In this document: positions 4,376-39,603 of the stretch, piece after piece
Numbering within the stretch: position 1 is the first letter of the stretch
Layout of the letters: the number at the start of each line of letters is the position of its first letter
DNA from: Trichosphaerium sp. ATCC 40318
Taxonomy: Eukaryota; Protista; Tubulinea
Direction of reading: 5' to 3'
DNA: 64,000 nucleotides
NCBI GenBank assembly: GCA_038496445.1
Contig: JALMLS010000179.1
Coordinates: forward strand, 1 to 64,000
Translations under genes and position numbers: made by a program
Notes under the pieces: generated by a model
Databases searched by the model: none
What the model was told of the DNA's origin: nothing
Seen by the model: the letters and a program-made list of their open reading frames with translations, nothing else

Positions 4376-4572
4376 GGCTATCTACTCTTCGCCAAATATG
4401 AGAATTACAGAATTATGTAAAATACCAACTTTTAGCACGTGAAAGTGCTCCTTACCTTGTTTTACTGCCAACGTTTATACACAAAGCAACTAAAGCGCTT
4501 ACTAAAAAGTTTGACTGTGCTTTCTGTTTGGTGGCTTTTCGTTTGTTTTATTATTCACAATCAAATACTGTG

Positions 4573-11191: not shown

Positions 11192-11359
11192 ATCTGTAAC
11201 GATATCGCAGTTTGGGCTAAACAACGCACTCAGTTATTCCCTGTACAAGATGCTATTGGAAAACGCGCATTTGACACTGACTGTCAGTCATACTTGTACC
11301 TTAAGTTATTTTCACGTACTTCAAGCCAAGATAGCGTCAACGGCAAGAAGCAGCACTCT

Positions 11360-12038: not shown

Positions 12039-12119
12039 ACAAGCTAAAAAGATGAGCATACACTCGAGCAAGAGTGCGACCACCAAGTGAAAGTAAACGG
12101 TTGTACCAATAAAAATACT

Positions 12120-13491
12120 TTAATTTTTCAATACCATTGTAGTTTTTCTTTTAAACCATCAAGCGTAGCATGTGTCCATGTTTTTGAATTACATCTTGTA
12201 GCAACGATAAAACAGTAATGTGTTTGTATTAGTATCCACTCTTCCACTTCATCTAAACGTTCTATAATTGCTACTCTACAAAATATTCAATAAGCTGAAA
12301 TATCACTCACGTTATTTATTACCGTTTTGTGTCTTCTTTTGGAATGTAGTTATTATAAATTTGAAGCATATCTTGTACTTCAACATGAGAAAATCCAGCG
12401 GCATTAAATCGAGAAACTTGTGACTCCATTGTGGGAAACTGAGGTACTGATTTCAAAGGGCATCCACGCATCTAAAAAAATGATGAGAAAACAAGTTACA
12501 AAAAGAAAGCATGATTACGTTGAGTGCCTTGATCATTTGCCTAAGTAGTTAACTTGTTAGTAAACGCAATACATATACTTATTATTACGCACTTCCCAAA
12601 TGGATCATTAGGTTTTATCATCTCGTATAATGCAAACTGAATTAAATTACATTTTGTACCAAACCATGAAATTATTCTATCACTCTCTTCCTTATCAAGA
12701 TATACAAGAACACATTCAGATATAACTAGCGTGGGAACACTTAAAGTCGCTTGTTAGTATCACTATGAGTATATCCAACTCACTCCACTTTGAAACCAAA
12801 GGATAACAACGAACTTGTAAATTTCTCCAAATTTCGAAGATCTGTAGGAAACAAAGAATAATTATCTGCTGTAAGAGTTCCTTTCTCTTCAAGGTGTCAG
12901 CATTGCACATATTACATCACAACGTACTGTCAACATTCACACCACTTAATAAACTATTTAGGGATACTTCTCGTTGTATCACGGTGCTTTTATGCAATGT
13001 TAATTCCATAAAGTCACACTCGAACCAATGTGCTGATTTTGCATTGGGTAAAGTCTAGGAGAGTTTTCAGTCAACACGTGCTGCAACGGTTTTCCCGTCG
13101 ACTCTTTACATAATTCATAATTCTGAAACTAGGCGTTGAGGTCCATTATACGTACATGAAGTGCAAAATACGATGTGTCAAAGCCAGCTCCTAATGTAAC
13201 GACTTGTTTGCCACCAGACTCTAGAAACGCTTTTGTAAACCCACGAACAGCACTAACACGCGCATAGGTGCCTAGAACGTTAGTTACTTTAACAATTTGT
13301 TTGTACAAATTACACTACCTCTATTTATCAATGGTTGACGCCGTTTATTGCTGTTTGCAAACAGCCGTAAGGCATCATCTTTAAAATAGCCTAATTTCGC
13401 ACAAGAACTACAATATTAGTCATTTCACGCGCATTCAAGCTTACTATTTCGTATTTGTTGCGTCATTATTGGTAGTGATCACTTGTGACAT
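12120..13491 (-). CDS. LCMT1: Leucine carboxyl methyltransferase 1 (PP2A methyltransferase), spliced
   Basis: VITTNNDA, SCAKLGYFKD, PLINRGTYAR, QVVTLGAGFDTSYF, LDEVEEW..HYC. Confidence 0.88.
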
Positions 13492-13793
13492 TTTGAGGCG
13501 TTATCCTTACCACAATAAAACGTACAACGCTGAGAACACCAACTGACGTTCACCAGCAACCTTTTTGTTTTTAACTGCTCTGACTGTTCGAGTCATTTCA
13601 AAGTCCCAACAGACAACAAAACCTCCCTGATAACGAGTATTGTCTCATCTCCCCCTGATTCAGAACCCTTGTGCAACATTGCCAATCGTTGAAAAATTAA
13701 CCTTTAAAATTATACGTCAGATGTCGTTTTACACGTACAAAACGGGCATTTCTTTACCAATAACACAAGAAGAACATCAATACCCAAGCTAAA

Positions 13794-16432: not shown

Positions 16433-16911
16433 GATCCTATACTCTTGTATAAAGTGTAAATACTTGTGAATAAAGTACGGGAGAGATCCTTTCATTTTTA
16501 TCAAATAATTCGTGACTATTGGAAATACAACTTATTTTTGGAGTTCTTTTGCTATTGAATTATAATTCAAATTAGTTTGTTGTAACTTTTGCAACGATAA
16601 CCTTTAAAAAGGCGAAACAACTTTTACACTTTTTTTACATTTCACAGTTGTCGTTTTACATTTCTTAGGATGAAACCTCGCATTAACTGATTATTTCAAT
16701 ACCATTGTACTCGTAGCCACATCACTCACGTAATGTAAATTGGTGATAAACTTTTTGGAGGGAACAATGTCTGCACAAAAAAAAAATCTGACATTTTCTT
16801 TGGTTTGTCTAAAATTATTCAGTTTTCGTTCCGCCAGGCGTCAAACGCATCTACTCCTCTTCTCTAGGCTTAAGCGTGGTTTCGCGTAACATTTAACGCA
16901 ATATTGCCGCA

Positions 16912-19900
16912 ATGGCTAGTTTCGTGTTCAACTTGAGAAGCGCCATAGAAGAAATAGCTCTGGAGAAGCAGCAATGCCAAACTGGGCTCGAAACTCTACT
17001 AAAAACAAGAGTACGCATTTCTAGCATATTTCGCAAGCGATTTTAGGTGTATTTACAGTTTTACGGTTATATTTTGCAAATTGTATCGTTTTTCTCATCT
17101 TCCTAACAAAATCGCGTCTTTAAATGTCAAACCAAGTGTTATTTCACCACAGTGACCACACGTCCTCATTCTCTTCTCTATAGCAATGGGAACATCAACA
17201 CCGACAAGACGCGCTTTCTATAGCTTGCAAATGGTTGCTCTTTCCGAAGTTAACCATCTTCATTGCTATAAAACTACTACCACTACTGCCAGGTACGCTT
17301 ACGAACTTGTTTTTGTTTTTTGTTCTTCCTTATTTACTCGCTTTAGAACTCATAGCTCGTATCGCCAACGAGAATGGGCTACAAGGTGTGCCTGAGGATG
17401 CCAGCGTTAGACATGCGCTCATTTGTTGCGCTTTTTCAAAAGTCATTAGCCTAGCCCCTCATCTACGGCTCAGCATACTGAAGTTCTTTACGGATCGTCA
17501 ATCTATTTTAGATCCAATCGAAAGCCTCAAACGCAGAGGCGACAATGTACGCACCAGCTACCGCATTTCAGCTTTTAACCTTTGAAAAACTTTCTCATTC
17601 TTGTTTTCCTTCTCAACTTTTCAAAGAGTCTTTTTGCTCGTTATGTTTAGTGTCGATGTGCTTATTACTATTAGGCAATGGCATTAGAGCTAGTTAAAGC
17701 AGCCTACCGATTTTTAAAATTTTCAGTGGAAGACTTCAAACCTCTTTGGAACTGGAGTCCATTGTTCACTCTCCTCGGTGATGCCTCAGGCGATATTTCA
17801 CAAGAAATAAAGGCTTTCGTAGCACAGTGCTTGGTCATAATCTACGACGTGAAAGAATCGCGTATCGAAGAAAATGCAGAGTATAAGATGCACCTCAGAT
17901 CGGACGTTATTTTAAGGTACGTGGAGTTGTTCTACTCCTTTAGTTTTTTTTGAATTTGGCCGTTTTAATATGATGAGACAAAACTTGTTCTTGATACCCG
18001 TGAGAGATATTCATCTCATTCATCCATCTGAAGAAAAAAAACCAAACTAGACTTTTTCTCTTTTGCTTTTTTTCGAGCACGTCATTGATAGTTGTCCTTA
18101 GATTCGACGAGGCTCAAGCAGAAAGCCTTCGCCTATTTTACGCTGGCGTAGGCGGTGATCATTACACGACATATAACGAGAAGGGCGATCGCGGCCAATA
18201 TATCACAGCCGATGATTTGAGCCCTTCTCTTGTCGATGTATGTTCATTCTTACTGCCAAAGAAAAACTCAACCTATGTACCTCTACGTATGGTTGAGACG
18301 CCAACTTTCGAGAAAAACTTAAAAGGTACGTATTAAGCAACCTTCAAAACGAAAATCTCTGCCTTTTTTCTCAAAAGCTTTATTTTTTTTGTTCAAGAAC
18401 CTAAAACCCTTTCCTGTTCTAAACCCTTGTTAGGCCTTGCCCTCGCTATTTGCCGTGGCAACCCAATTTTGTTGCAAGGTGTCACTGGGTCTGGTAAAAC
18501 AGCCCTTATTGACCACGCTGCATCACTTACAGGGAACTACAAGGACCTTATTAAACTCCATCTCGGCGACCAAAGCGATCCAAAAGTACTTTTGGGTACT
18601 TATATTTGCACCGATATTCCGGGTGAATTTCGTTGGATCGCCGGCGCTCTTACACAAGCCGTTGCTGAAGGGCGGTGGATAGTAATAGAAGATATTGACT
18701 TGGCACCACCAGAGGTTTTGTCTGTCCTTATCCCTTTACTTGAGCGTCGTCAGCTCTTCATTCCTGGACGTGGCGATACTATTGCTGCAGCACCTGGCTT
18801 TCAGATATTTGCTACGCAAACACTAAGAAATGCTCAGGCAGGCACAGCACGCACTCAAAATGGTACGTACCTTTTTTTTTGTGAACTCTTTTTATTTGAA
18901 AAAGTGCCACGGATAAAATTCCTGTGGTGTCATGTAAAGGCATGGCAGGGCCGCAATCTGTGGAAAATCAAGTTTTTTCTCATGGGTGCCGTTAACGCGG
19001 TCGGGTGCTACACTCTTATTGTGGTTCTCAACACTCAAAAGACGAACATTTTAAATTTTTCTCACAAAACGAAACTGCCGTTTCCTTATCGTACGGGTCT
19101 TTTCTTACTCCTACCAGCTGAACTACTTGGCAACTACTGGACTAAAGTAGTCATTGATCCTTTAACAAGCGATGAACTCTCCCTCGTACTCCTTGAAAGG
19201 TTCCCAGACTTGAAGAAACTCATACCTACAATAATCGAAACTTTTGAACTTTTAAAGTCAGGTGAATCGTCAGAGACTGAGCACCTCCAAAACAGACTTG
19301 CTCGAATGGGTAGATACATATCCACTAGGTACGTATAACCAAACAAGTCTTTACCTCTCTACAAAATCTTGCAAATACACCACATGATTAAAAAACTTTA
19401 CTACTACTCCTGAGGACCGTGATTACTCATTTTATCACCAAGATCTCTGAGGTTATAACTCAACAAAAAATCTTTTTTTAACAGCGTCAGTGCTTCAGTA
19501 CACTCACACTTTTTGCTTCCGTAGGGATGTCACCAAATGGTGTAAGCGTATAAATACTTCAGTATCAGATGTATCGCTCACAAACCACATCAGCTCTCAT
19601 TTACGGGAACTCGCTTTTCGTGAAGCCCGTGATTGCTTTTGTTCTGCTGTGTCTGATATAGAAATACGCATAGAGATGGGCCACATGATTGGCCGTGCCT
19701 GGGGGATATCCAAGGACAGAGTCAACTATTACTGGCATCACCACTCACCTTCTAATATGACGACTACTACAGTCTTTCGTATTGGTCGTGTGTCGTTGCC
19801 TAGACATCATATTCGAGAGAGAATCGGCACTGAAGGCCAGACTTTTGTTTACGGTCGTTGGAGTGCTGAAATGATGGAACGTCTCGCACAATCTGTTGCA

Positions 19901-22900
19901 CATAACGAACCTGTATTACTCATTGGAGAGACAGGAACAGGAAAGACTAGAACGATACAGAATCTAGCAACATCCTGTAACTACAACCTACGCGTTATTG
20001 TACGTTTGAGAAAAAAATTAATCCCTTTCTTGCGTTTTTCTCACTTTTTCTCTTAGAATATGAATCAACAGAGCGATAGCGCTGATCTATTGGGTGGTTT
20101 TAAACCAGTACAGATTCGTCTAATCTGTGCTCCTTTATACCGCAAATTCGTCACTCTCTTTAATAAAACGTTTTCAAAGAGAGCCAATAAGTACGTTATT
20201 CTACTCTCAAATTGCGTTACAATATGCTTACGCATCCTGCAGAGATTTCTTGGACAAAGTCGCCGAGCATTTTGGAAACAAGAGCTGGCGTAAGCTAGTC
20301 TTGATCTTAAAGCACGCTATGACGATCGTTGATAAGAAAATCAATGATAGCAATAAACGTGAGGTCGGTTCTGGAAGCCCTAACAAAAAAAACAAGAGAG
20401 TTAGCCCAGAACTCATCCAGAAATGGGAGAACTTTCGTGCTCAACTTTCAAAGTTCGAGATGCAACACGACAAGATTAAAAACACATTTGCATTCGCCTT
20501 TGTTGAGGGTGCACTCGTGAAAGCCGTACAAAACGGCGAATGGGTACTACTCGATGAAATTAACTTGGCATCAGCAGAAACATTAGAGGTACGATATCTT
20601 GACTCTTTCTTAAATGTCAGTGTACTTACCATCTCCTTTAGAGCCTTAGTGGTTTGCTTGAAGGTAACTCCATAACCTTGACTGAGCGTGGTGATATCGT
20701 ACCCATCAAGAGACACGATAACTTCAGGTTATTCGCATGTATGAACCCAGCTAATGATATTGGCAAGAAAGAGCTTCCACCTGGCTTACGTAATCGTTTT
20801 ACTGAGTTCTATGTTGATGAACTGGAAGATAAGGATGATTTACGCGCTATCGCAAATTCTTTCCTTTCCACTATCAACGGTGTTCCTTCAAACGCCATCG
20901 ACGCTGTTGTCGACTTTTACTTGGCGTCCAGGAAGAAAGCACCAGAACTAACTGATGGTGCTAATCAAAGACCTCATTACAGTCTACGTACATTCGCACG
21001 TATGTTGGAGTACACAGTACTATCACAACAGAGTGTAGGATGGCTAAAGGCGCTTTATGAAGGTGAGTTTTTTCTTTGTGATTTTTTTTTGAAAACTCAG
21101 ACATATGATTACAAAAAACAAACCTTTAAGACGGGATGTCTGATTTTAAGTGATTGTACTTTTTTTATGAAGTCTCTACAAGAAACGAAAATTCTTGTTT
21201 TGTTGCTTTTTTTCAACTCTTCTCCCTTTCGTCGTTTCCACATTCTGAAGATTTTAAATAGGTGCTATGATGAGTTTCTTGACCATGCTTAACGCTGAGA
21301 GTTACTCAAAGATGAATAAGCTGATCGACAGTGTATTCGAACCTCTTTCTACCAATGAAGCGTCTCTTGACAGAAAACCGAAAAAACCAAAGGACGGAGA
21401 TTTTGTTCAAGTTGACCAGTTTTGGATCAAAAAGGGGAAATTTACACCTCATAAAGATCAGAACTATATCTTGACTCCCTCAATTTTACGTCATCTTAAT
21501 GAGCTCGCACGTGTTGTGTCTGTCAACAAGTACCCCGTATTACTTCAAGGACCAACATCGAGTGGTAAAACGTCCATGATTGAGTACCTTGCAAATTGCA
21601 CTGGTAATCGTATGGTTCGTATTAACAACCACGAACATACGGATATTCAAGAGTACCTTGGTACTTACCGTACAGCTCAAGATGGTAAACTCATATGGAA
21701 CAACGGTATCCTTGTGGAAGCTCTTAAGAACGGCTACTGGGTTGTTCTTGATGAACTTAATCTGGCGCCTTCTGAAGTTCTTGAAGCGCTTAATCGTTTG
21801 CTTGATGACAACCGAGAATTGTTCATTCCAGAGACACAAGAGACGATCAAACCTCATCCTGACTTTGCCTTGTTTGCAACTCAGAATCCTCCTGGTGTAT
21901 ACGGTGGACGTAAAGTTCTTTCAAGAGCCTTCAGGAATCGATTTTTGGAGCTTCACTTTGATGATATTCCTGACACAGATCTTCGAGAAATTTTAAGAAA
22001 GAGATGTGGTATCCCTAATACTCACGCAAAGAAACTTGTGGACGTCATGAAGGAGCTTCAGAGACAGCGTCAAAGTAGTAGATTGTTTGCTGGTAAGCAT
22101 GGGTTTATTACTTTGCGTGATTTGTTTCGTTGGGCTGAGCGCCACCCTCGGAATACACAGTACGTTTCGCTAAACATTTTTTGAAGATTTTTTTTTTCTG
22201 TTTTCGCAATGATGCCTGGCGTACCTTTGCGTATGCCGCCCCAGTCATAAGGTCTGTTGACGAGAACACTCCCACTCTTAGCATAAACCAAAAAAACAAA
22301 CTCTTTTCTTTTTTTGAGCTTGTTGAGACTCACGTTTTAATAAGGGAATTGGCTGAAGAAGGATATGTTCTATTAGCTGAGCGGTTACGAAAAGACGAAG
22401 AAAAAGTAATAGTTAAGGTACTTATTCGATAACCTCTGTTTACTCTTTCTTTTTTTGAACCTAAAACCATAAAATGATTAACGAGCTTTACGCTCGGCGA
22501 ACTGCTGAAATTCTGTGAGCACAAGAACTTGATCTGATTTATAAACATGTCAACCTATTTCCTTACCTTACCGCGAAAAGCATCAGTACCAATACTCATC
22601 GCTATTCTAGGGTTGTATCGAGAAAATCATGAAAGTCAAAATTGACACTGACAATCTCTACAATTGGGATGTTAACCCACGCTTAAAGCCACTCAAGGCA
22701 TTAGCGCTTACTGCAACAGAAGCCCTTGGCTTCAGGATCGTGTGGACTCACGCAATGAGGCGTTTGTTTACACTTGTAGGACGTTGTGTCCGCTTTAAGG
22801 TACCACAGTTTTCCTTCTTGATAAATTTACTTTTTCAACCCACGGGATATCCAGCTCCCCTACTTGACAGTATTTTGAGTCATGAGGGGCGTTAATATGC

Positions 22901-25900
22901 CCAAAATCTAAGAAAAAACAAATCTTGTTTTTTGCATTCTTGTCTTCATTGTTCTTAGTACTAAAGTACTTTGATAGGAACCAGTAATGCTTGTTGGCGA
23001 TACTGGTACTGGTAAAACAACTGTTGTACAGTTATGGAGCTATATCCTCGGTCAGCACTTGCACATGGTGAACTGTCACCAGCACACTGAAACAAGTGAC
23101 TTTTTGGGTGGTGTAAGACCAGTTCGTGGTAAAGAAGCCATCGCAGAAGAACTTGATGGCTTACTTCGCTCATTCTTCCAACACGCAACATTTTTCGACG
23201 GCGTAGAGAAAGTTCTCGCTGATTACGATAATGTTGTGATTAAGGATAAGATGATGGTCTGGGAAGCTTCTGAAAAAGAAATCATTACTGTTGTCAACAC
23301 AGGAAAGGCTCAAGAAGCCATAGATCCTTCACAGCTCCCTTTCCTGCTGGTACGCTAGATTTTACGATCTTTATGTTCGAAAGTATTGACTTTTATCGTA
23401 GAGCTTGTCCACCGAGATAAGGCGATTGTATCATCAGTACATATCTCTTTTCTTATGGTATGATGGTCCTCTTGTTACTGCAATGAAACGTGGTGACTTG
23501 TTCCTCATTGATGAGATTTCTCTCGCTGAGGACGCCGTTTTGGAACGTATTAACTCTGTTCTTGAACCAAGTCGTCTTTTGGTTCTTGCTGAGAAGAGTA
23601 CTGTTGAGATTGAAGAACTTGTAGCTCACTCTGACTTCCGTATCTTTGCTACTATGAATCCTGGTGGTGATTTCGGAAAGAAAGAGCTGTCTCCTGCTCT
23701 ATCTAACAGGTTCACTTCTATTTGGGTTCCTCAGATATCTTCAAAAGAAGATTTATCTCAAATCATCCAAGAACGCTTTGCAACAAAAGATCTTGCTGAA
23801 AACTGGACTTCTCCTGTTCTCGAGTTTGTTATGTGGTGGGCAGAAATGCAAAATATCTCCGCTATCAGTCTACGCGATGTACTCGCTTGGGTTGGCTTTA
23901 TGAACAAGAGTTCTTCCTGGCTTGGTAACGCTAAGGCATACGTCCATGGCGCGTGCTTAGTACTACTCGATGGCTTGGGTATTACTCACCCATTACGTGT
24001 TGATGAGTTGAAAGAAGGCGCATTGAAGTTCATGCTTGGTACGCGATTTTTTTCTGAAATTTGGCTTTTTTTTTCTTGCATTTTTTTTTCCTTCTTGATC
24101 CGGCAGACACTCCTTGGTCTTTGTTAAGTAGTTAACTACATCGTACTTCCGTCTTCCCGGAAATTAAATTTCAGCCTGAGAAAAAACACCTCACGACCTT
24201 ACACTAGATGGTCATGAGACACCTGTCCTTAAGGCAAATTTTCGAAAAACTAAAAAACAAGCAAAGAAGAAAAGAAATTTCTTTCCTAAGACTTCTCTTT
24301 TTATTGATTGTTTTTATAGACCGCATACCAAAGAACTTTAGAGATGAAGCTAGACAGCTTGTTCTACACTCTACCATCGAAGAAAGACCAAAGAACACCA
24401 AACAAAGGTTCTCTATCGGAGAGTTCTGGATTGGTAAAGGAAAAGGAAGCACTAAAGGCCAGAGTTACGCCTTGGATGCACCTACAACAGCAACGAATGT
24501 AATGAGACTCCTACGTGCCATGCAGCTTGATAAACCTGTTCTACTCGAAGGTAGCCCTGGTGTAGGTAAAACAAGTCTTGTTGCAGCTGTTGGCGCTGCT
24601 GCTAATATGATTGTTCGACGTATCAATTTATCTGATCAAACTGATATTATTGACTTGTTGGGACAAGATCTACCTTCTGAGGACCCTGAACAACCTGGTT
24701 TCTCATGGCGTGATGGTATTTTCCTTCAAGGTTTAAAAGCCGGTGATTGGATACTACTTGATGAAATGAACCTTGCTTCACAATCAGTTTTGGAAGGTCT
24801 TAACGCAGTGCTTGATCATCGTCAAGAAGTTTTCATTCCTGAACTTGGACGTACATTTAAATGTCCTTCTTCCTTCAAGATATTCGCTTGTCAGAATCCT
24901 ACTGGACAAGGAGGAGGTCGTAAAGGATTACCTAAATCGTTCCTAAACAGATTCACAAAGGTAAGCGCTTTGCGCTCAAAATCCAACTAAAACCACCTCT
25001 TCTAACTCTTTTTTACAGGTCTATGTCGATAAATTCACGTCTGAAGATCTTCTCTTCATTGCAAGTGCACTTCATCCTAATATCGATAGTGAAACGCTTA
25101 AATCCATGATAACTTTCAATGATGCTATGCATCACGAGTCAATGGTTCTTTGTAGTTTTGCTAGAAAAGGAAGTCCTTGGGAGTTTAATCTTCGTGATAT
25201 TCTACGTTGGTGTAAACTCATTGATGAAAGCCCTAATAAGTCACCTGGCTTGTGGGTTGACTTGATGTACCTTCAACGTCTTCGTGAACCTGAAGATAGA
25301 GTATTTGCATCAGAACTCTATGAGAAGACTTTTGGTGAACCTCCTCTTGTTTATAAGGCTCCTTACTATCACGTAACGCCTACAACACTTCAAGTTGGCC
25401 GTTCTACTATCGAGAGAAGTCCTGATGCATCATTTTTGCCTTCATACGACACTCTCTTACTCAAGGTAAAGTTTTTCTCAGGCTGTCTTTTAACTTACTT
25501 CTTTTTATAGAATCTATCGCCAGCACTTCAACACGTCATTAAATGCGTTGATATGAACTGGATGGTCATATTGAATGGACCTACAGCGTCTGGAAAGACT
25601 ATGCTCGTGAGAATGTTGAGTAAGCTCGCTGGCAAGAAACTTCATCACTTTGCTGTGAACAGAGCTGTAGATACAACAGATCTTCTTGGATCTTTCGAGC
25701 AAATCGACTTGATGCGCCATAAACAAATTGTTTTGGATCGTATTGAGAGTTTGATCACTCAAACAACTCAAGCGCTTCTATTCGCTTCAGATGACGCTGC
25801 TAGAGCTTTGGAAGCTGGCAGAGATATTCATTGTCGCTGGCATCTTATCTCCAAGTTCAGAAATGCTCAAGGAGACGACAGTACACTATCTGGAGCCTTC

Positions 25901-31900: not shown

Positions 31901-34900
31901 CGTAATCGTATAGATGTCAGGAAGCTTGAAGCGCCAGAAGACTCTATCTTTACAAAACCAAGAGCGAGCATCTTCAAGGTATGTTTCTTCAGCCCTTTAA
32001 AACGCAAATTTCATTTTCTCGTTTACCTCGCAATGATGCCTGGCGTACCTTTGCGTATGCCGCCCCAGTCATAAGGTCTGTTGACGAGAACACTCCCACT
32101 CTTAGCACAAATCAAAAAAAAAAACTCTTTTTTTTGTTTTCCGGATTATGTCTTAATCAAGAGTAGAGCGCCAATGTTAAAGAAGTATGTATTATCTTAG
32201 AACCCGTACAAGAACTTCGAGGCAAACTTGTACATCTTCAAGAGAACACGGATGAATTCAAAGACAGTACAACTATCAAAGTACTTGTTGAGCTTATTGA
32301 TAAGATACTTGTTTACCCTGTAAACGTACCTTTCATGCAAGTACTCACAGGTCTTGAGCTTCTTGCACGTCAATCGCAGAAGTTTAACATGATATTACCG
32401 AAGAAGTGGTCTATCACAGAGAACTTGCAAGTTATTTACACAATCATCAATAGATGGCGTCGTATTGAGCTTGACAGGTGGCCTGCTGTTTTATCACAAC
32501 AATCTCTTGATGTTAAGCTTAACGCTCTTCAATTCTGGTTCCATCTTTATCGTGTTACAATAATTGATGGAGAGTCTTATGATGTACCTCAATTCCTTGG
32601 TCTCATTAAAGAGTTTATGGAGCTTACAAAGTTTGGTGAGATGGAAACAAAGCTTAATATGATTAAAACACTCTACTGTCAAATGGTCAATGAGCTTAGA
32701 CTTGGTATTGATCGTAAATTTGTATCTGAGTACGTCCATCCAAACAAGAAACTTTTTTTTTCGATTTCCATTTTTTTGAAGAACGTAAAATTTTTCTGAT
32801 TGTTTTACCTCTAGGGCTTCACGTATTGCACATATTAACGTGTTGTATAACATCTACAATATCTACAAGTTATATCTACCTGAAATCAAATCTCAAGTTG
32901 ACCGTGATAAAGAACCTATCGAACAAGAACTCAAGAACTATATCAAACTTACAAAATGGAAACCAAAAATAGAAAATTACTACAGACTTAAAGATCAAAC
33001 AGAAAAGTCTCATAGACATTTAAGTAAATTCGCAAAGAAGTTTAGATCAGTTCTAAAGACACCTCTTGCAAAGTTCTTAATGGTACTCGGTGAAAGAGAG
33101 TCAACAATAGAAGGCACTCTAGAACACAGAGAATACGAACTACCTGAACCAGAGTATGAGTTTAAAGAAATAACAGTGATGGAGAAGGACGATGATGACG
33201 AGGACGACGAAGGTGAAGAAAAAGGAAAATCGAGTACGAAGAAAAGACGAAAGTCGAAGAAACCTACACCAAAGCTTGACGAAGATGGTGAAGAGGTTAA
33301 GACTATAATTAAAGTGGAAAAGAAAGACAGATACATCCCTAAACCGCTACCTATCTTCGACTTCACGCCTGATAGCACTTTGGTTAAACCTTTCCTTAAG
33401 AACCCTCAAGTACCTTCAAAGTTATCAAAGCTATTCAATCTAGACGATAGCACATTCAGACGTAATAAGATACCTCAGTTATTCGAGAAAATCGTTAACA
33501 TGACCAAGAATGATATCTTACCTGTATTGACTAACTATCAACGGGAAAATATCAAAGGTCTTGATGACCTCTCTACTACAGTTATAACAAGATCAAATCG
33601 ATTGAGGTACGTTCATTCTTAGTGTTAATTCATAATATGATACTTACGCCTTGTTTAGAAATAGCAAGAGTGCTACAACAGGTCAGAAAAAACTTGCCAT
33701 GAAGAACTTGTTAGATGGTCTTAAGTCTGAAGGAGTTTCTTGGCTTCGTAAAGGCCTTGATAAGGAACACCGTAAACCGGAGTTCCTATTCAAGGTTGAT
33801 GCTATTGATACGACACGATTCAAGCAAGCTACTAAAGATCCTGTTGAAATCAACACAATGATACTTTGGCAGCAAGCTGAGGAATACTACTTCAAAGTTG
33901 TTCTCAAGATACAAAACTTGCGTATCGCTGAGCAGACTCACCACGGTGATATATCACAGCGTGAAGCAACCATGATCGCTGGATACCTCGAACACTTGAC
34001 CGCTATAAACATCAAACAGCGATCAACGTTTGGAACAGTAATCGACGAGTTTGTCATGTTACGTCGTCTCATTGAGACTATACATCGTATTCCTACACCT
34101 GAAAAGAAAGCTGATTTGCCTGTGTTCCCACCACAGTCTCTTGTCAAAGAGTCACTGTTGACACAGAAGACGATCTTTGATAGTGTTGTCGCTGGTGTGT
34201 TGGAATGTAATGTACTCATGCATTCCCTCAAAGATGATCCTACAAATGAAGCAGTTGTTATCTTAGAGCGATCAATGCAGAAGCTCAAAAAGATCAAGGT
34301 AAGCTTTTGTTTTCTCTTTTCTTTTTTTTTGTTGCTTTACTTCATCCTTGGCGTGTTCTTACTTTGATATCTTAGCGTCGTATTGAGCAACACATTGCTC
34401 GGTTTACCCTTGTTAAAGTCCGGGAAGACAGAGCTGAGTTGTTAATGACCAGTGATGCTATTCATTTCATGAGAAATAACACTATCGAATATGAAACCAT
34501 CAAGACACGTGTGTTGAATCAAGTCCTATCAACCGTCCCAGAGCATCTGGCTGGACCTTTCAACGAACTTCTTGAAACCACTAGTAAAAAACTAGAAGAT
34601 ACCCTTTATGACCCAGACACAAAGCCAAAGGCTAAAACAGCTAAAGAGGTACGCTATTTTTTCTGATACAAAACAAAGTAAAATTTTCAATTTGTTTCGT
34701 TTTCGCAATGATGCCTGGCGTACCTTTGCGTATGCCGCCCCAGTCATAAGGTCTGTTGACGAGAACACTCCCACTCTTAGCATAAATCAAAAAGAAAAAA
34801 CCCAAAAATTTCGCAATTTTTTGTGACTTTTTGTACTCATTTCGTATTTCTAGCTCAAAGCTCAAAGCTCTTTTGTATCTGAGTTTTCAGAATCCTTCGA

Positions 34901-37900
34901 AAAGACAGTATCTTCAATACTTGTCGTTATGCAGAACCTTAATGCTTTGGCGGAGAACCCTACAAACCGTAAGCCAAAACCTGAGGATGAAGAAAACGAT
35001 GATATGGAAGAAGAAGCTGAAGAAACTGCTCACTTCCAAAGAAGTAATAAGCACTTTATTCGTGCATTCAAAAAGATCAACGTATCTAGAATAATCGCTC
35101 TTGTGACAGAGTTAAATAGTCAAGTGGTACGTAGTTTTACAAATCCTGTTCTTGCGCGACTTGATTGCTAACGTATCTTGTCTTCAGAGCGCATTTGCAA
35201 CAGATAGTTGGTCAGACTGTCTCATTCGTAAGAAAGTTCTTAATGTATGTGCTGGACAGATGAGAAGGCTATACCCTCTCTTAAGGCAGATACAACGGAT
35301 ACAACAAATGTTCTTGTATCATTTCTCAGCCTATCACCGAGCTGTACGTTTATCACTCTTGGTTTATTTTTCTTTCAACAAAAAAAAAGGAGCAATCGCT
35401 CGCCGACTACCTCCTCCCTCTTTGCAACTTGATGATTTATGTTTCAAGAAGTTCTTTGATTAATGCCACACGCCTAATAAACGTGATGGTTGCAATATAT
35501 AGGCCCACGCTGATGCAAAAAAAACACTTTTTTTTTTATTGTGTTTGAATGAAGGCATGTCTATTGACACTTCATTTCTAGAGCGCAAAGTTTACGTACA
35601 TCTTGTCACGTATTGTGTTGGTCATTTACAAGAATGGTTATTGCATACCTGTCGAGGAAGAACAAATGGAACCTAGTGACATGGTACGACATCTTTTTTT
35701 AAAGTGCAAACTCTTTTATAAAAATCACGCCACAGCTCATCGAAATTGCTTTGTTATTTCGATTGAATGTTGGTGTATAACTTAATGATGTCTAAACGTA
35801 TTAGTCGCATCAAATAACCCGTGTTGCACATTTTCCTTTCTGATTTCAAAAAAAAACTTCAATTCTCTTTACTTTTATGCTTGAGTTCGAAATATTGACT
35901 TTTTTAAAGCTTGGTGATGGTACCGGCCTTGGTGAAGGTGAAGGTATGGAAGACATCTCCGATAAACGCCAAGATCTTGAATTGGATGACTTCAATGATG
36001 AACAAGAAATGCAACCAGACAAAGCACCAGAACAAGTCGAAAATGGGCTTGAAATGGACGAAGATTTTGGCGGCACTGAACACGACTTCGAACCCGATGA
36101 TAACCCTGATGAAGAAGACGATGAGGAACAATCCATGTCTGAAGAGATGGGCGAACTCGATCCTGATAAGGAAGAGATTGTCGATGAGAAAATGTGGGAC
36201 AGTGACGATGAGGATGATGACGGTAAAGAAAATGAAGATGAGAAATACGAGAAAGATGCACCTGTTGATAACCAAGGCGAACAAGAGGATGAGATCCGCG
36301 CTAAAGAGGAAGACGAGAAAAACAACAACGATGGCGACACTGATAAAGAAAAGCCAATGGAAGGACAAGACGACGGCCTCGATGATATGGAGGGCGACGA
36401 TGATGATTTTCTTGCCTCTGATGACGACTCTGATTCAAGTGAAGCCGGTGAAGCACCTGAGTATGAAGATACCGTGGAAGATAACTTCCATGTTCCTCCA
36501 CGACCTGAAGAGGATGTCTTTGACCTCGACGATATGGAACTTGACGATGAAGATATGGAAGACGACGAGAATGAAGAAAATGCTCCACCTGATGAACTAC
36601 CCGATGATATGGTCGGAGAGTTCCCAGAAATCGATGAGGAAGAAGAAGAACAAGGCAAAGGCGACGATGAAGATGATCAAGAAGGTCAAGGCGGCGAAGA
36701 AGAAAAAGAAGCCGACGGAGCTGACGAAGATGATATGGAAATCGAAGACAAAGAAACTGAACAACGCGAGGGAGGTGAAGTCGAAGACGAAGCCGACAAT
36801 CAAGATCAAAGCGATGAAGATTCTGAAGAGGAAGAACCTCTAGCTGCTCCTCAACAGCACTTTGAAGAGGAGGAGAAAGAAGAGGAAGTCAAAACTCTCG
36901 GTGTTGAAGAGAACACTGGAAAAGAATCCGCCAATGTTGAGGTATGTATTTTTTTTCTCATTTTTTTCTTGTTTGTCAGCGCATTGTAGCGCTTCTTTTG
37001 TTGTTTATGATTACACAAAACAAACCTTTAAGACGGGATGTCTGATTTTAAGTGATTGTACTTTTATTATGAACTCAACAACGTAAAAAGAAACTCTTTG
37101 TATTCTTTTGAAGTTTGAAGAGTGTTTTATTGATGTTCTTCTTTCTTAGTTCCTTGGAGAGCAAGATGATGATAAACCAGATGAAGAAGATAAGCAACAG
37201 CTCGATCAGCAGGAGCGCAATGCACAGGAGCAAGACCGTCTTGATACAAAAGATGAGAATGCAACTGATGAAGGTCAAACTGAAAAAGAAGCCCAAGAGG
37301 AAGACACAGACCCAAACCCTATGCGGTGCGTTGTCTTGCTTGCTTGTAAAAAAAAATTCAAAAAAAAAACCAAAACCTTCAATCTACATGACGATTTTTA
37401 TTCAAGACGGGGATGATCTGCTGATTATAACTAGAATCCTGATAGATTTATTTTTTCTCAACTTTTTTTTTGAAAATAGTTTTTTGTTGTGCGTTAGTTC
37501 TAAGTATTTTAAAGGTCTCTTGGTGATGCTCTTAAGCACTGGAAGAATAAATTAAATGTTGAAGATCCAAAAGATAGTAATGAGAATGAAAAAGAAGAAA
37601 ATCAAGATGATGAGGCACCTGAAGAAGGTGAAGAACAAGAACCTGATCAAGATAAACTTTATGAGTTTATTCTTGATAATGAAAAGACCGTTGAAGATGC
37701 TCAAGTACTTAAAGAAGCATTGGAAGACCAAGCAAAGGAACAACAAGAAGACTTGGAAAAAATGGAAGAAGACTTCATGAATGATGACGAAGAAGAAGGT
37801 GATGATGGTGAAGAAAACGTCACTGATAAAAAAGAAGAAAAGAAACCAAATGACGAAAAAGAAGATGAAGAAAATGATAATCAAGCCAAAGGAAGCAAGA

Positions 37901-39603
37901 AAAAACATCCTACGTACGCAACGTTTTACCCGCGATTTTTTCGTCGTTACTCTTCTTTTTTTTGTTTTCGCAATGATGCCTGGCGTACCTTTGCGTATGC
38001 CGCCCCAGTCATAAGGTCTGTTGACGAGAACACTCCCACTCTTAGCACAAATCAAAAAAAAAGAAATTGAATTTTTAAAACACATTGCTGTTCAGCTTTG
38101 ACTAATTGTTTAATTCTCCAGTGGTTCATTATACGATGACGAAATGGATGTTGATAAAGACAAAGACCAAGACAAGAAAGCTGCAGGTGGTGACGAAGAA
38201 GATAAACTCGACGAAGATGATGACATTGAAATGCAAGACGCTGATGTTGATCAACATACATCAACAGGACTGGACATGCTTGATATAATGGAAGACCATG
38301 AACACATAGTGAGCAAGGAAGTTCTTACATACGAAGACTATGAACGTATTCGCTTCGATCTAGAGAAGCTACTTGGTGTTTGGCGTCGTGATGTCACTGC
38401 GTTCCGTAAAGGCCAAGTACTTTGGCGTAATTTGGTTCACACCACTGCTCCATTTGCTGCCAGCCTTTGTGAACAACTTCGATTAATTTTGGAGCCTACA
38501 CAACGATCTCGTCTAACTGGCGATTATCGTACTGGAAAACGCCTCAATATGAGAAAACTCATACCGTTTATTGCCAGTAACTTCCGTAAAGATAAGATTT
38601 GGTTGCGCCGAGATCGTCCAAAGCAACGATTCTATCAAGTACGCAAACAACACAAAAACTCCAAATTCTTCTTTTTTTTTTCCTTCAAAACCAGTTTTTC
38701 GCAATGATGCCTGGCGTACCTTTGCGTATGCCGCCCCAGTCATAAGGTCTGTTGACGAGAACACTCCCACTCTTAGCATAAATCAAAAAAACAAACTCAA
38801 AAATTTCGAGCTGTTTTTTTGGATCGTTTTACTTACGTTATACAACAGATTATGATTGGTGTTGATGACTCTAAGTCAATCAAAAATACTGGTGCAAGTG
38901 AGCTTCTGACTATGTCAGTCGCTTTAATCACTGGTGCAATGACACGACTTCAAGTCGGTCAGATTGGTCTTATGAAGTTTGGAGAGTTCCCACAGCTCCT
39001 ACATCCATTCAATGTGCCTTTCAGTGATGAAAGAGCATCTTTGATACTCTCTCGACTCACTTTTGAACAAACCCAAACCAATATGCACAACTTCCTTTCA
39101 AACGCAATTCAGACTCTTGAATTGTCTAGAGGTGAAGCTCATGCTATGGCTGCTGATACAAAACAGATCTTGTTTGTTGTTTCTGATGGTAAATTCGGAG
39201 ACGCTCGCGCTGATATTAAGAAATGGGTCAGAAGGTATGTTCTTGAATCTCATAGACTTTTTCCCGAGTTTTTTTTGGTAGAAAATCTTGTTTTCGCCCA
39301 AGTACTTTTGTTCAACTACGCAGTGTTGTTTTCGTTATTAATATCGTTGTTAGAGCGAGTGAAAGCAATATCTTTGTTGTATTCATCATCATTGATGTGC
39401 GTAGTGATCCTGCTGAGACGATTTTGAAATGGCAAGATGTTGTTATTGAGATTGATCCAGTAACTAAGATGCCTAACCCAGTCGTTTCAATGTATATGGA
39501 CAAGTTCCCGTTCCCATACTACGTGCTTGTTAGACAAGTCAAAAACTTGCCAGAAATCCTTGCTGACGCTATTCGCCAGTGGTTTGAACTCACTGTAAGG
39601 TGA
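16912..39603 (+). CDS. MDN1: Midasin (MDN1/Rea1) AAA-ATPase for pre-60S maturation, multi-exon
   Basis: Six Walker A motifs (GVTGSGKT, GETGTGKT, GPTSSGKT, GDTGTGKT, GSPGVGKT, GPTASGKT), long linker, D/E-rich region, and MIDAS/VWA tail (GDYRTGKRLNMRKLIPFIAS, VDDSKS, FPFPYY, LADAIRQWFE). Confidence 0.96.
17966..18035 (+). ncRNA. Intronic C/D snoRNA, U30-type LSU guide
   Basis: C ATGATGA 17970; D CTGA 18028; guide ATCTCATTCATCCAT is antisense to the conserved LSU AUGGAUGAA(C/U)GAGAU. Confidence 0.8.
18905..19051 (+). ncRNA. Intronic H/ACA snoRNA candidate
   Basis: Hairpin CCACGGA/TCTGTGG with inner TGTCATG/CATGGCA; H box AAATCA 18965; second hairpin; ACA 19046-19048 followed by TTT. Confidence 0.6.
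19380..19454 (+). ncRNA. SNORD24: Intronic C/D snoRNA U24 homologue
   Basis: C ATGATTA, D' CTGA, C' GTGATTA, D CTGA. The D guide CACCAAGATC is antisense to LSU GAUCUUGGUG in the U24 register; the D' guide is antisense to the adjacent GGUAGUAG. Confidence 0.85.
21099..21175 (+). ncRNA. Intronic C/D snoRNA family D, copy 1 (guide AAGACGGG to LSU CCCGUCUU)
   Basis: C ATGATTA 21105, D' CTGA 21140, C' GTGATTG, D-like ATGA 21167, terminal stem AGAC/GTCT; near-identical copy at 37001. Confidence 0.7.
22204..22287 (+). ncRNA. Intronic 84-nt RNA family A, copy 1/6 (P-loop antisense, atypical U31/snR67-like)
   Basis: Identical core TCGCAATGATGCC...TGCCGCCCCAGTCA...CTTAGCA(T/C)AAA in six midasin introns. 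Confidence 0.75.
22467..22542 (+). ncRNA. Intronic C/D snoRNA family C, copy 1/2 (target unassigned)
   Basis: C ATGATTA 22474, D' CTGA 22505, D CTGA 22534, terminal stem ATAAA/TTTAT; identical copy at 31408. Confidence 0.75.
22835..22918 (+). ncRNA. Intronic single-hairpin H/ACA-like RNA family B, copy 1/2
   Basis: Stems GGG/CCC, GCTCCCCT/AGGGGC and TGAC/GTCA with an internal pocket; identical copy at 28723. Confidence 0.65.
24099..24241 (+). ncRNA. Intronic H/ACA-like RNA with an antisense element to LSU GACCAAGGAGU
   Basis: Hairpin TCCGG/CCGGA, H box AAATTA 24161, second hairpin GCCT/AGGC followed by AAA; ACTCCTTGGTC lies in hairpin 1. Confidence 0.55.
28306..28389 (+). ncRNA. Family A copy 2/6
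   Basis: Identical core (ACA variant), intronic. Confidence 0.75.
28723..28806 (+). ncRNA. Family B copy 2/2
   Basis: Identical to 22835-22918, in a different intron. Confidence 0.65.
29178..29246 (+). ncRNA. Intronic C/D snoRNA candidate
   Basis: C ATGATGA 29183, D'-like CCGA 29208, D CTGA 29238; target uncertain. Confidence 0.65.
29630..29705 (+). ncRNA. Intronic C/D snoRNA, U35/snR73-type LSU guide
   Basis: C GTGATGA 29636; guide ACGACGGTCT antisense to LSU AGACCGUCGU; D'-like CGTA; C' TGACGA; D CTGA 29697; stem ATTTA/TAAAT. Confidence 0.8.
29874..29943 (+). ncRNA. Intronic C/D snoRNA candidate (guide TAGGTCAGA, possibly SSU UCUGACCUA)
   Basis: C ATGATTA 29879, C'-like CTGATGC, D CTGA 29933, stem TTTATA/TATAAA. 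Confidence 0.65.
30693..30822 (+). ncRNA. Intronic H/ACA snoRNA
   Basis: Hairpin GCAC/GTGC plus CTTGTACGTG/CACGTACGAG with a pocket 14 nt from H box ATAGTA (30749); second hairpin; ACA 30817-30819 followed by TTT. Confidence 0.75.
31408..31483 (+). ncRNA. Family C copy 2/2
   Basis: Identical to 22467-22542. Confidence 0.75.
32028..32111 (+). ncRNA. Family A copy 3/6
   Basis: Identical core (ACA variant), intronic. Confidence 0.75.
34703..34786 (+). ncRNA. Family A copy 4/6
   Basis: Identical core (ATA variant), intronic. Confidence 0.75.
35421..35519 (+). ncRNA. Intronic C/D snoRNA candidate
   Basis: Stem TTTGCA/TGCAAA, C TTGATGA 35429, C' GTGATGG, D CTGA 35510; TGTTTCAAGA (anti-LSU UCUUGAAACA) and ATAGGCCCAC (near anti-LSU GUGGCCUAU). 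Confidence 0.7.
35781..35847 (+). ncRNA. Intronic C/D snoRNA candidate, preceded by a hairpin at 35727-35780
   Basis: C ATGATGT 35785, D CTGA 35840; target unassigned. Confidence 0.5.
37001..37080 (+). ncRNA. Family D copy 2/2
   Basis: Core differs from 21105-21170 at 2 positions; different terminal stem. Confidence 0.7.
37381..37448 (+). ncRNA. Intronic C/D snoRNA with a U21-type LSU guide
   Basis: Stem AATCTA/TAGATT, C ATGACGA, guide TTCAAGACGGG (anti CCCGUCUUGAA), D' ATGA, C' CTGATTA, D CTGA 37439. Confidence 0.8.
37968..38051 (+). ncRNA. Family A copy 5/6
   Basis: Identical core (ACA variant), intronic. Confidence 0.75.
38699..38782 (+). ncRNA. Family A copy 6/6
   Basis: Identical core (ATA variant), intronic. 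Confidence 0.75.

What the first reader, a model, noticed from the sequence alone, without database searches (positions are those of the whole stretch)
16912..39603. Midasin gene as a mega-host for about 23 intronic snoRNA-like RNAs
Seen: most long midasin introns carry one ~70-150 nt higher-complexity island between T-rich and A-rich flanks, with C/D or H/ACA boxes. There are about 23 loci and 15 distinct RNAs; short introns carry none. Known: ribosome-biogenesis genes host intronic snoRNAs, but protein-coding hosts usually carry only a few. Nearly all assignable guides target the large subunit (U24-, U30-, U35-, U21- and U31-type), the same particle midasin remodels. Inference: one Pol II transcript co-delivers the pre-60S ATPase and a 60S modification kit, like a eukaryotic operon.
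Basis: partly seen in the sequence, partly recalled or inferred. Interest (0 to 1): 0.85.

Follow-up and report, generated by a model that had tools for sequence, protein, structure and literature searches.

The report
Midasin gene hosts 23 intronic snoRNAs
An amoeba-like eukaryote's giant midasin gene carries a small guide RNA for ribosomal RNA modification in 23 of its 42 introns, which is a familiar arrangement (intron-encoded snoRNAs) pushed to an unusually high number in one protein-coding gene.

Summary
I built a frame-consistent midasin model: 43 exons, 42 introns, 5,547 aa, 16912-39603, plus strand. RNA contigs confirm nine junctions. The introns fall into two classes. Twenty-three are 178-281 nt and each holds one RNA-sized island. 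Nineteen are 43-173 nt and hold none. The last box of the C/D loci lies 70.4 +/- 9.2 nt from the 3' splice site, the spacing known for splicing-coupled snoRNP assembly. Eight kinds have geometry-consistent targets; five fall on mapped yeast sites. These are LSU Cm1437 (SNORD24, Rfam), Gm2619 in the P-loop (six identical copies), Cm2959, Psi2944, Psi2975 and G639/C636, and SSU Psi1181. Seven kinds stay orphan because native rRNA was not available. Stable small RNAs were not shown. The 'operon-like 60S kit' reading is not supported: 7 of 8 assigned kinds targeting LSU is what site numbers alone predict (P about 0.2). Other unchecked scan notes on this genome report snoRNAs in unrelated genes. 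Verdict: a real, record-size protein-coding snoRNA host and a new member of a known kind.

The parts
16912..39603 (+). Midasin (MDN1/Rea1) gene, 43 exons, 42 introns, 5,547 codons
   Evidence: Matches PDB midasin at E 3e-70 and full-length homologues. Frame-consistent curated model. Nine junctions seen in spliced RNA contigs.
17964..18036 (+). Box C/D candidate in intron 17917-18101 (C AUGAUGA 17970, D CUGA 18028)
   Evidence: D box lies 70 nt from the 3'ss. Targets are uncertain: LSU 15 bp with 1 mismatch in 4 of 8 rRNAs, and SSU AUCAAGAACGA 11 bp.
18904..19051 (+). H/ACA-like RNA in intron 18863-19117; the 5' hairpin has a pocket and an AAAUCA hinge
   Evidence: Fold. The pocket fits SSU ugcggc-UU-aauuu in 8 of 8 rRNAs with exact geometry, the yeast Psi1181 equivalent. 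The 3' hairpin is atypical.
19378..19454 (+). SNORD24 (U24) in intron 19329-19524
   Evidence: Rfam RF00069, 42 bits against a gathering score of 41. The D guide pairs 15-17 bp onto the LSU Cm1437 equivalent.
21100..21176 (+). C/D family 'D6', copy 1, in intron 21063-21261 (C AUGAUUA, D' CUGA, C' GUGAUUG, D AUGA)
   Evidence: The D' guide pairs 14-15 bp with LSU CCCGUCUUGAA in some taxa, at the C636 equivalent. The two copies have different but each self-complementary flanks (read from the sequences).
22204..22283 (+). C/D family 'D2' (P-loop Gm guide), copy 1, in intron 22160-22344
22467..22542 (+). C/D family 'D5', copy 1, in intron 22418-22610 (stem AUAAA/UUUAU, C AUGAUUA, D' CUGA, C' UGUGAGC, D CUGA)
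   Evidence: The target is not settled; a 5.8S match of 12 bp was seen in one foreign rRNA.
22829..22918 (+). Single-hairpin H/ACA-like family 'D4', copy 1, in intron 22800-22977
   Evidence: Fold. The pocket fits LSU aacg-UG-agcugggu in 8 of 8 rRNAs with exact geometry, the yeast Psi2944 equivalent.
24100..24241 (+). Two-hairpin H/ACA-like RNA in intron 24039-24319 (hinge AAAUUA, 3' box AAA)
   Evidence: Folds. The 3' hairpin pocket fits LSU gacaggu-UA-guuuu in 8 of 8 rRNAs, the yeast Psi2975 equivalent.
28306..28385 (+). D2, copy 2, in intron 28248-28451
28717..28806 (+). D4, copy 2, in intron 28685-28865
   Evidence: The intron junction is confirmed by RNA contigs.
29177..29249 (+). Box C/D candidate in intron 29121-29315 (AUGAUGA ... 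CUGA, 9-bp terminal stem)
   Evidence: Junction confirmed. No target found.
29631..29705 (+). Box C/D candidate in intron 29575-29769 (GUGAUGA, D' CGUA, C' UUGACGA, D CUGA)
   Evidence: Ten perfect base pairs to LSU AGACCGUCGU in 8 of 8 rRNAs. The fifth-nucleotide rule gives the yeast Cm2959 equivalent. Junction confirmed.
29874..29941 (+). Box C/D candidate in intron 29805-30008 (AUGAUUA, D' CUGA, D CUGA, 5-bp stem)
   Evidence: No target found.
30706..30822 (+). H/ACA-like RNA in intron 30642-30886 (hinge AUAGUA, ACA at 30817 followed by 3 nt)
   Evidence: Folds. Junction confirmed. Only a weak 3+6 bp target.
31408..31483 (+). D5, copy 2, in intron 31364-31545
   Evidence: Junction confirmed.
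32028..32107 (+). D2, copy 3, in intron 31979-32166
   Evidence: Junction confirmed.
34703..34782 (+). D2, copy 4, in intron 34649-34853
35421..35519 (+). Box C/D candidate in intron 35344-35581 (UUGAUGA, C' GUGAUGG, D CUGA, stem UUUGCA/UGCAAA)
   Evidence: No geometry-consistent target.
35780..35846 (+). Weakest C/D candidate, in intron 35684-35885 (AUGAUGU ... CUGA, no terminal stem, 42 nt from the 3'ss)
37002..37078 (+). D6, copy 2, in intron 36942-37149
37382..37448 (+). Box C/D candidate in intron 37326-37514 (AUGACGA, D' AUGA, D CUGA, 6-bp stem)
   Evidence: Twelve perfect base pairs to LSU CCCCGUCUUGAA, anchored on the AUGA box, at the yeast G639 equivalent.
37968..38047 (+). D2, copy 5, in intron 37914-38121
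38699..38778 (+). D2, copy 6, in intron 38639-38848

Best explanation
Most or all of the 23 islands are genuine intron-encoded snoRNAs. Each enlarged midasin intron carries one box C/D or H/ACA guide RNA. The guide is transcribed as part of the Pol II midasin pre-mRNA, bound by snoRNP proteins around the time of splicing, and released from the excised, debranched intron by exonucleolytic trimming. The fixed position of the C/D RNAs, about 70 nt from the 3' splice site and so about 50 nt from the branch site, points to splicing-coupled assembly as described in mammals. The mature RNAs then guide 2'-O-methylation and pseudouridylation of rRNA, mostly LSU and at least one SSU site. The high count most likely arose by repeated intron-to-intron copying inside one long, intron-rich, steadily expressed gene. 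Four kinds are present in 2-6 copies. Copies are kept alike by selection, gene conversion or both. Hosting by midasin is probably opportunistic rather than a dedicated 60S programme. Shown: gene structure, splicing of nine introns, the two intron size classes, boxes and stems, copy identity, target geometry against foreign rRNAs. Inferred: stable small-RNA products, snoRNP binding, actual modification, mode of copying.
For: The gene model is frame-consistent and nine junctions appear in RNA contigs. Host introns are 178-281 nt; the others are 43-173 nt. Intron size follows RNA size: about 60-85-nt C/D RNAs sit in introns of 182-238 nt, about 115-140-nt H/ACA RNAs in introns of 245-281 nt, and the 70-nt hairpin in introns of 178-181 nt. 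The D-box end lies 70.4 +/- 9.2 nt from the 3'ss (n=18). YTNAY branch-like motifs sit 12-22 nt from the 3'ss. Human C/D snoRNAs sit about 50 nt upstream of the branch point (PMC5519232). SNORD24 passes the Rfam gathering score. The six-copy RNA aligns weakly (about 10 bits) with two protist C/D snoRNAs that carry the same P-loop guide. Target positions fall on nucleotides that match the yeast modification map at many flanking offsets in eight independent rRNAs (with the table of PMC5699541). These are Cm1437, Gm2619, Cm2959, Psi2944, Psi2975 and SSU Psi1181. Shuffled pocket strands give a geometry-consistent conserved hit only 0.17-0.37 times per hairpin. All copies lie in sense orientation and only in midasin introns within the window.
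Against: No read-level evidence for stable 60-140-nt RNAs: only contigs were available, and they cannot show ends or abundance. Rfam recognises only one of the 15 kinds above threshold. Seven kinds have no convincing target in foreign rRNAs, and generic short complementarity is at noise level. Several boxes are non-canonical: D = CUUA or AUGA, D' = CAUA or CGUA, 3' box AAA instead of ACA. One candidate (35780-35846) lacks a stem and sits off-position.
Confidence: 0.85

Rival explanations
1. Dedicated functional coupling. Midasin was selected as host so that one transcript delivers the pre-60S remodelling ATPase and a set of LSU modification guides in fixed proportion, like an operon.
For: The host is a 60S biogenesis factor. 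Seven of 8 assigned kinds, covering 15 of 23 loci, target LSU sites. These include peptidyl-transferase-centre positions: the P-loop Gm and the Psi2944, Cm2959 and Psi2975 equivalents.
Against: One assigned guide targets SSU (the Psi1181 equivalent). An LSU share of 7 in 8 is expected from site numbers alone (P about 0.2; site list in PMC5699541). Seven kinds are unassigned. snoRNAs act early and co-transcriptionally on pre-rRNA, whereas midasin acts late on pre-60S particles, so no stoichiometric link is obvious (established knowledge). Other notes of this scan report snoRNA-hosting introns in unrelated genes of the same genome (not checked by me). Midasin loci of two distant taxa gave no C/D-scanner hit.
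Confidence: 0.15
2. Part of the set consists of inert copies: snoRNA-derived repeats or retro-copies spread through introns, of which only one or a few per family yield functional RNA.
For: Only RNA-sized blocks are shared between copies and the flanks are unalignable. The 3' flanks are A-rich. An RNA contig shows a D5-like paralogue elsewhere with a different 3' guide (loose end at 31471).
Against: The six D2 cores are 100% identical, with no decay. All copies are in sense orientation, one per intron, at the functional distance from the 3'ss. There are none outside midasin in the window. A-rich 3' and U-rich 5' flanks also occur around single-copy candidates and can form external stems.
Confidence: 0.1
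3. The islands are intronic splicing or regulatory elements, or chance box-like motifs, and not stable RNAs.
For: No direct expression data for small RNAs. C/D candidates show no fold-energy signal (z about 0). C/D-like motifs occur by chance in the acidic exons.
Against: The Rfam SNORD24 hit. Guides fall on known modification sites with correct geometry. Terminal stems of 5-9 bp. About 40-fold enrichment in introns. Lack of fold energy is normal for C/D RNAs.
Confidence: 0.04

Closest known systems
Intron-encoded snoRNAs of protein-coding host genes (for example vertebrate ribosomal-protein, NOP56, NCL and TAF1D genes; yeast ASC1 hosting snR24)
   Same: One snoRNA per intron, in sense orientation. 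C/D RNAs lie about 70 nt before the 3' splice site (about 50 nt before the branch point; PMC5519232). Both C/D and H/ACA classes occur, and the host is involved in ribosome production.
   Different: To my knowledge, 23 loci of 15 kinds in one intact 5,547-codon gene far exceeds the handful (up to about 8) known for protein-coding hosts. The host is midasin, and no paper in the searched library links midasin to snoRNA hosting. Four kinds are amplified within the gene.
Multi-snoRNA non-coding host genes and repeated arrays (GAS5, SNHG1, Drosophila UHG genes; SNORD116/115 and SNORD113/114 arrays)
   Same: Many consecutive introns each carry one snoRNA. The arrays contain near-identical repeated copies.
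   Different: Those hosts are non-coding or poorly conserved transcripts. Here the exons encode a conserved essential AAA ATPase, and the copies are scattered among unique snoRNAs rather than arranged in tandem units.
SNORD24/U24 (Rfam RF00069)
   Same: Full-length match above the gathering score. The D guide pairs onto the LSU Cm1437 equivalent.
   Different: The score is only 1 bit above threshold. The D' guide pairs with one mismatch and points 3 nt away from yeast Am1449. The host differs (RPL7A in human and ASC1 in yeast, by my own knowledge).
P-loop Gm guides: yeast snR67, human SNORD31, T. brucei snoTBR7, Tetrahymena TtnuCD11
   Same: The same antisense element, GCCGCCCCAGU, in the same register. 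The second G of GGGG is selected, the yeast Gm2619 equivalent. As in TtnuCD11, the guide sits before a degenerate D' box.
   Different: The Rfam scores are only about 10 bits, so this is the same function but not demonstrable common descent. The D' is CAUA and the terminal box is CUUA. There are six identical gene copies.
Single-hairpin H/ACA-like RNAs (trypanosomatids, Euglena, Archaea)
   Same: Family D4 is one hairpin with a bipartite pocket abutting the upper stem and a short 3' tail.
   Different: The box after the hairpin reads AAA, not AGA or ACA, and the lineage is different. The RNA ends are not mapped.

Membership tests
Box C/D snoRNA | C box (RUGAUGA) near the 5' end and D box (CUGA) near the 3' end, brought together by a terminal stem | tested here: met
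   Canonical or one-mismatch C box plus CUGA plus a 4-9-bp stem in 9 intronic loci. U24 is confirmed by Rfam. Partial exceptions: D2 (D = CUUA), D6 (D = AUGA) and 35780-35846 (no stem).
Box C/D snoRNA | Antisense element of 10 or more bp ending next to D or D', with the target nucleotide opposite the fifth position | tested here: inconclusive
   Met for U24, D2, I23a, I35 and D6 against foreign rRNAs. Not met or not decidable for I4, D5, I22, I23b, I32b and I33. Native rRNA was not available, and generic matches are at noise level.
Box C/D snoRNA | Stable 60-100-nt RNA bound by fibrillarin, Nop56, Nop58 and Snu13 | not testable with these tools
   Only assembled contigs of public runs could be laid on the sequence. 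No small-RNA libraries or immunoprecipitation data were available.
Box H/ACA snoRNA | Hairpin-hinge(ANANNA)-hairpin-tail with ACA 3 nt from the 3' end | tested here: inconclusive
   I24 has hinge AUAGUA and ACA followed by 3 nt. I15 has hinge AAAUUA but AAA in place of ACA. I6 has a good 5' hairpin and hinge but an atypical 3' hairpin. D4 is a single hairpin followed by AAA.
Box H/ACA snoRNA | Bipartite pocket pairing on both sides of a target U, about 14-16 nt from the H or ACA box | tested here: met
   I6 hairpin 1 (6+5 bp), D4 (4+8 bp) and I15 hairpin 2 (7+5 bp, with 2 unpaired nt on each side) hit sites conserved in 8 of 8 rRNAs. Shuffled strands give 0.17-0.3 such hits per hairpin. The sites equal the yeast Psi1181, Psi2944 and Psi2975 equivalents. 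Pocket-to-box distance is 13-15 nt (my count on the sequences). I24 is weak (3+6 bp).
SNORD24 (RF00069) | Score at or above the curated gathering threshold over the full model | tested here: met
   42 bits against 41, model positions 1-76 of 76, E 8e-5 in a 6.4-kb search.
Splicing-dependent intron-encoded snoRNA arrangement | One snoRNA per intron, sense strand, C/D RNA about 65-85 nt upstream of the 3' splice site | tested here: met
   23 of 23 loci lie singly in introns on the sense strand. The D-box end lies 70.4 +/- 9.2 nt from the 3'ss. Host introns are spliced in RNA contigs.
Operon-like functional unit (host protein and guides acting on the same particle) | Guide targets restricted to the host's substrate beyond chance, and a host-guide link conserved in relatives | tested here: not met
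   There is one SSU target. The LSU share of 7 in 8 is not above expectation. Midasin loci of two distant taxa show no C/D-scanner hit. Close relatives were not available.

The most novel reading that the evidence does not exclude
Midasin in this lineage has become a dedicated snoRNA super-host. Its transcription sets the supply of a block of peptidyl-transferase-centre guides (six gene copies of the P-loop Gm guide, and the Psi2944, Cm2959 and Psi2975 equivalents) in step with the late pre-60S remodelling ATPase. The identical copies are kept uniform by intragenic gene conversion. That would be a eukaryotic analogue of an operon for large-subunit maturation.
Probability: 0.12. Interest if true: 0.75.

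Novelty: new member of a known kind. Interest (0 to 1): 0.5.

Why it matters
If small-RNA data confirm it, this would be the most heavily loaded protein-coding snoRNA host gene that I know of. It holds 15 kinds of guide RNA in 23 introns. It shows that the 'about 70 nt before the 3' splice site' rule, worked out in mammals, also holds in an amoeba-like lineage, which suggests that splicing-coupled C/D snoRNP assembly is ancient. The gene is a compact natural case for two questions: how snoRNA genes multiply from intron to intron, and how copies stay identical. The locus also gives a ready list of predicted rRNA modification sites and unusual box variants (CNUA-type D', AAA in place of ACA, a single-hairpin pseudouridine guide). 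These can be tested in a little-studied lineage.

Tried and rejected
- Rfam at relaxed thresholds, on the whole gene and on four sub-ranges, named only SNORD24 and gave two weak protist matches for D2. The other kinds gave nothing useful.
- Unanchored antisense searches against eight complete foreign rDNA units do not separate candidates from shuffles (4 of 15 against a mean of 1.35 and a maximum of 4; 21 against 23-28). I therefore dropped target calls that rest on such matches. This covers the apparent U18-like match of 35440-35449, the SSU GGUUUGUCUGG matches that overlap C boxes, and the antisense match to LSU GACCAAGGAGU in the 5' hairpin of the H/ACA-like RNA in intron 24039-24319, which has no U in the right place.
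- The SSU Am974 assignment for the D' side of the 17964-18036 RNA depends on a numbering I could not fix, so I left it open.
- Two greedy or dynamic-programming gene models were wrong in places: one over-split and one under-split. I replaced them with a curated model.
- Midasin loci of two distant taxa (L118, L119) gave no hit with my C/D scanner, which is only a weak control. The closest homologue, P0041, is too long for the contig look-up.
- The D2 core is absent from the viral contig collection and from the scan's sequence index (a blank there means nothing).
- Native rRNA could not be obtained.
- The joined spliced protein was never sent to a search tool. Only single exons were searched, by reference.
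Full report
**What is there.**
- The stretch 16912-39603 on the plus strand is a midasin (MDN1/Rea1) gene. Its largest exon matches solved yeast and S. pombe midasin structures at E 3e-70. It also matches full-length midasins of 5,300-6,200 residues from Dictyostelium, Mastigamoeba, fungi and others, at only 31-42% identity. The lineage therefore has no close relative in the libraries.
- Other notes of this scan call the organism a marine amoeba. I did not verify this.
- After two automatic models that erred in places, I curated 42 GT..AG introns. Together they give one open frame of 5,547 codons, from the ATG at 16912 to the stop at 39601-39603.
- Contigs of public runs laid on 28200-34199 skip nine of these introns exactly. 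So the runs hold spliced RNA and the model is right there.
- The joined protein was used only inside scripts to check the frame.

- Introns fall into two classes. Twenty-three are 178-281 nt and 19 are 43-173 nt, with a median of 57.
- Every one of the 23 long introns holds one higher-complexity island between a U-rich 5' flank and an A-rich 3' flank. None of the short introns does. Only introns 17011-17183 and 17547-17674 are longish and empty.
- Intron length follows the size of the RNA inside. C/D RNAs of about 60-85 nt sit in introns of 182-238 nt. Two-hairpin RNAs of about 115-140 nt sit in the three longest introns (245, 255 and 281 nt). The 70-nt single hairpin sits in introns of 178 and 181 nt.
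- A plain C/D scan finds 9 intronic hits in midasin and 3 weak hits in the rest of the 64-kb window on both strands. Five more hits lie in the acidic GAUGA-rich coding region and are false.

**Evidence that these are snoRNAs.**
1. SNORD24 at 19378-19454 passes Rfam's gathering score.
2. The C/D candidates have C boxes with at most one change, CUGA D boxes and terminal stems of 4-9 bp. In family D6 the two copies have different flanks that are each self-complementary (read from the sequences).
3. The end of the last box lies 70.4 +/- 9.2 nt from the 3' splice site in 18 C/D loci. Branch-like YTNAY motifs lie 12-22 nt from the 3' splice site. The RNAs therefore sit about 50 nt before the branch site, the position reported for human C/D snoRNAs and tied to splicing-coupled assembly through IBP160/Aquarius (PMC5519232).
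4. Four kinds are repeated as RNA-sized blocks with unalignable flanks. D2 has six copies with an 80-nt core that is 100% identical. D5 has two copies, 100% over 76 nt. D4 has two copies, 99% over 90 nt. D6 has two copies, 96% over 71 nt.

**Targets.** The organism's own rRNA was not available. I fetched eukaryotic rDNA from metagenomes with a conserved LSU pattern and delimited eight complete units with Rfam.
- Generic short complementarity is worthless here. Matches of 12 nt with one mismatch, conserved in six or more units, are as frequent in shuffled candidates (21 against 23-28). I kept only long or geometry-anchored matches.
- U24's D guide pairs 15-17 bp next to its CUGA.
- D2 carries UGCCGCCCCAGUCA, 14 bp against the LSU P-loop in all eight units. 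A small-range Rfam search aligned it weakly (about 10 bits) to T. brucei snoTBR7 and Tetrahymena TtnuCD11. Both hold the same guide in the same register, followed by CUGA and AAUA respectively where D2 has CAUA.
- The RNA at 29631-29705 pairs 10 bp perfectly with AGACCGUCGU in all eight units. The RNA at 37382-37448 pairs 12 bp perfectly with CCCCGUCUUGAA next to an AUGA box. D6 pairs 14-15 bp with the same helix in some taxa next to a CUGA.
- For the hairpin RNAs, I required both pocket strands to abut the upper stem. This gave conserved bipartite hits for the 5' hairpin of 18904-19051 (SSU), for D4 (LSU) and for the 3' hairpin of 24100-24241 (LSU). Shuffled strands gave such a hit only 0.17-0.3 times per hairpin.

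**Mapping to known sites.** I took the yeast modification table from PMC5699541 and checked nucleotide identities at the published offsets in all eight rRNAs.
- Around the D4 target U, the residues at -74, -64, -23, -22, -21, +2, +4, +15 and +31 are C, U, U, G, U, A, C, C, U. This matches m5C2870, Psi2880, Um2921, Gm2922, Psi2923, Am2946, Cm2948, Cm2959 and Psi2975. So the D4 target is the Psi2944 equivalent.
- The 24100-24241 target is the Psi2975 equivalent, and the 29631-29705 target is the Cm2959 equivalent.
- The D2 target is the second G of GGGG. A U at +15, an A at +21 and U at +105 and +110 fit m3U2634, Am2640, Um2724 and Um2729, so it is the Gm2619 equivalent.
- The U24 target has A at +12 and G at +13 (Am1449, Gm1450), so it is the Cm1437 equivalent.
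- The SSU target has U at +6, +10, +88 and +109 and G at +90, so it is the Psi1181 equivalent.
- The G639 and C636 equivalents are not modified in yeast. From memory, G639 corresponds to human 28S Gm1303.
- Five guides falling on known sites with correct geometry would be very unlikely by chance.

**What remains open.**
- Seven kinds have no convincing target: 17964-18036, D5, 29177-29249, 29874-29941, 30706-30822, 35421-35519 and 35780-35846.
- Several boxes depart from consensus. D2 ends in CUUA and D6 in AUGA. D2 and 29631-29705 share a D'-loop-C' module of the form CNUAAG..UUGACGAG. D4 and 24100-24241 have AAA where ACA is expected. D4 is a single hairpin. The candidate at 35780-35846 is weak.
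- Contigs cannot show RNA ends or abundance, so stable small RNAs are inferred, not shown.
- One RNA contig departs from the window inside D5 at 31471 and carries another guide followed by CUGAUUUAU. A D5-like paralogue therefore exists elsewhere and is present in RNA-derived contigs.

**The interpretation.** 'Mega-host' is a fair description.
- The operon-like reading is not supported by what can be tested. Seven of eight assigned kinds act on LSU, and one acts on SSU. About two thirds of all guided sites lie in LSU, so this share has P of about 0.2.
- Other notes of this scan, unchecked by me, describe snoRNAs in enlarged introns of a Roco kinase, a phosphatase regulator, a prolyl-tRNA synthetase and non-coding hosts of the same genome.
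- The simpler reading is that a very long, intron-rich, steadily expressed gene collected guides and amplified some of them from intron to intron.
- How the six D2 copies stay identical while their flanks differ is unexplained. Gene conversion and copying of RNA-sized units are the candidates.

**Novelty.** Intron-encoded snoRNAs, multi-snoRNA hosts and repeated snoRNA arrays are all known. No paper in the searched library links midasin with snoRNA hosting. To my knowledge, 23 loci in one intact protein-coding gene exceeds known cases. I rate it a new member of a known kind, of moderate interest.

Noticed in passing
window 16912-39603, all 42 introns: The 5' splice sites of this gene follow an unusual consensus, GTACGT/GTACGC (26 of 92 GTRNG sites; most real donors). 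Branch-like YTNAY motifs lie 12-22 nt from the 3' splice site.
   Followed up: partly
window 29770-29804: A 35-nt mini-exon lies between two snoRNA-hosting introns (29575-29769 and 29805-30008). Its junctions are supported by RNA contig joints and loose ends.
   Followed up: partly
window 31408-31483 (contig loose end at 31471): An RNA-derived contig matches the 5' two thirds of the D5 snoRNA and then continues with a different guide followed by CUGAUUUAU. A D5-like paralogue with another D guide therefore exists elsewhere in the genome.
   Followed up: no
window 28200-34199: The public RNA contigs differ from the window at 1-5% of exon positions, mostly transitions, so they come from another strain or a close relative. 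Intronic stretches 29575-30008 are also covered at low depth, which suggests unspliced precursor or DNA carry-over.
   Followed up: no
window 35727-35776: A stable hairpin (z about -2.3) lies upstream of the weak C/D candidate in intron 35684-35885. This intron may hold something other than, or in addition to, a C/D RNA.
   Followed up: partly
window 35886-38640 (acidic exons): The Asp/Glu-rich linker of midasin is encoded by GAUGA-rich repeats. These mimic C boxes and draw weak Rfam hits to archaeal sRNAs (sR52, sR5 and others), a trap for snoRNA scans.
   Followed up: yes
window 28348-28366 and 29658-29675: The six-copy P-loop guide and the Cm2959-type guide share an internal module, C-N-U-A-A-G-N-U-N-U-N-UUGACGAG. 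This hints at common descent with guide replacement, or at a lineage-specific D'/C' motif.
   Followed up: partly
window 1-16900 and 39700-64000: Outside midasin the window has few long open frames and no convincing C/D candidates. The flanking genes were not annotated.
   Followed up: no
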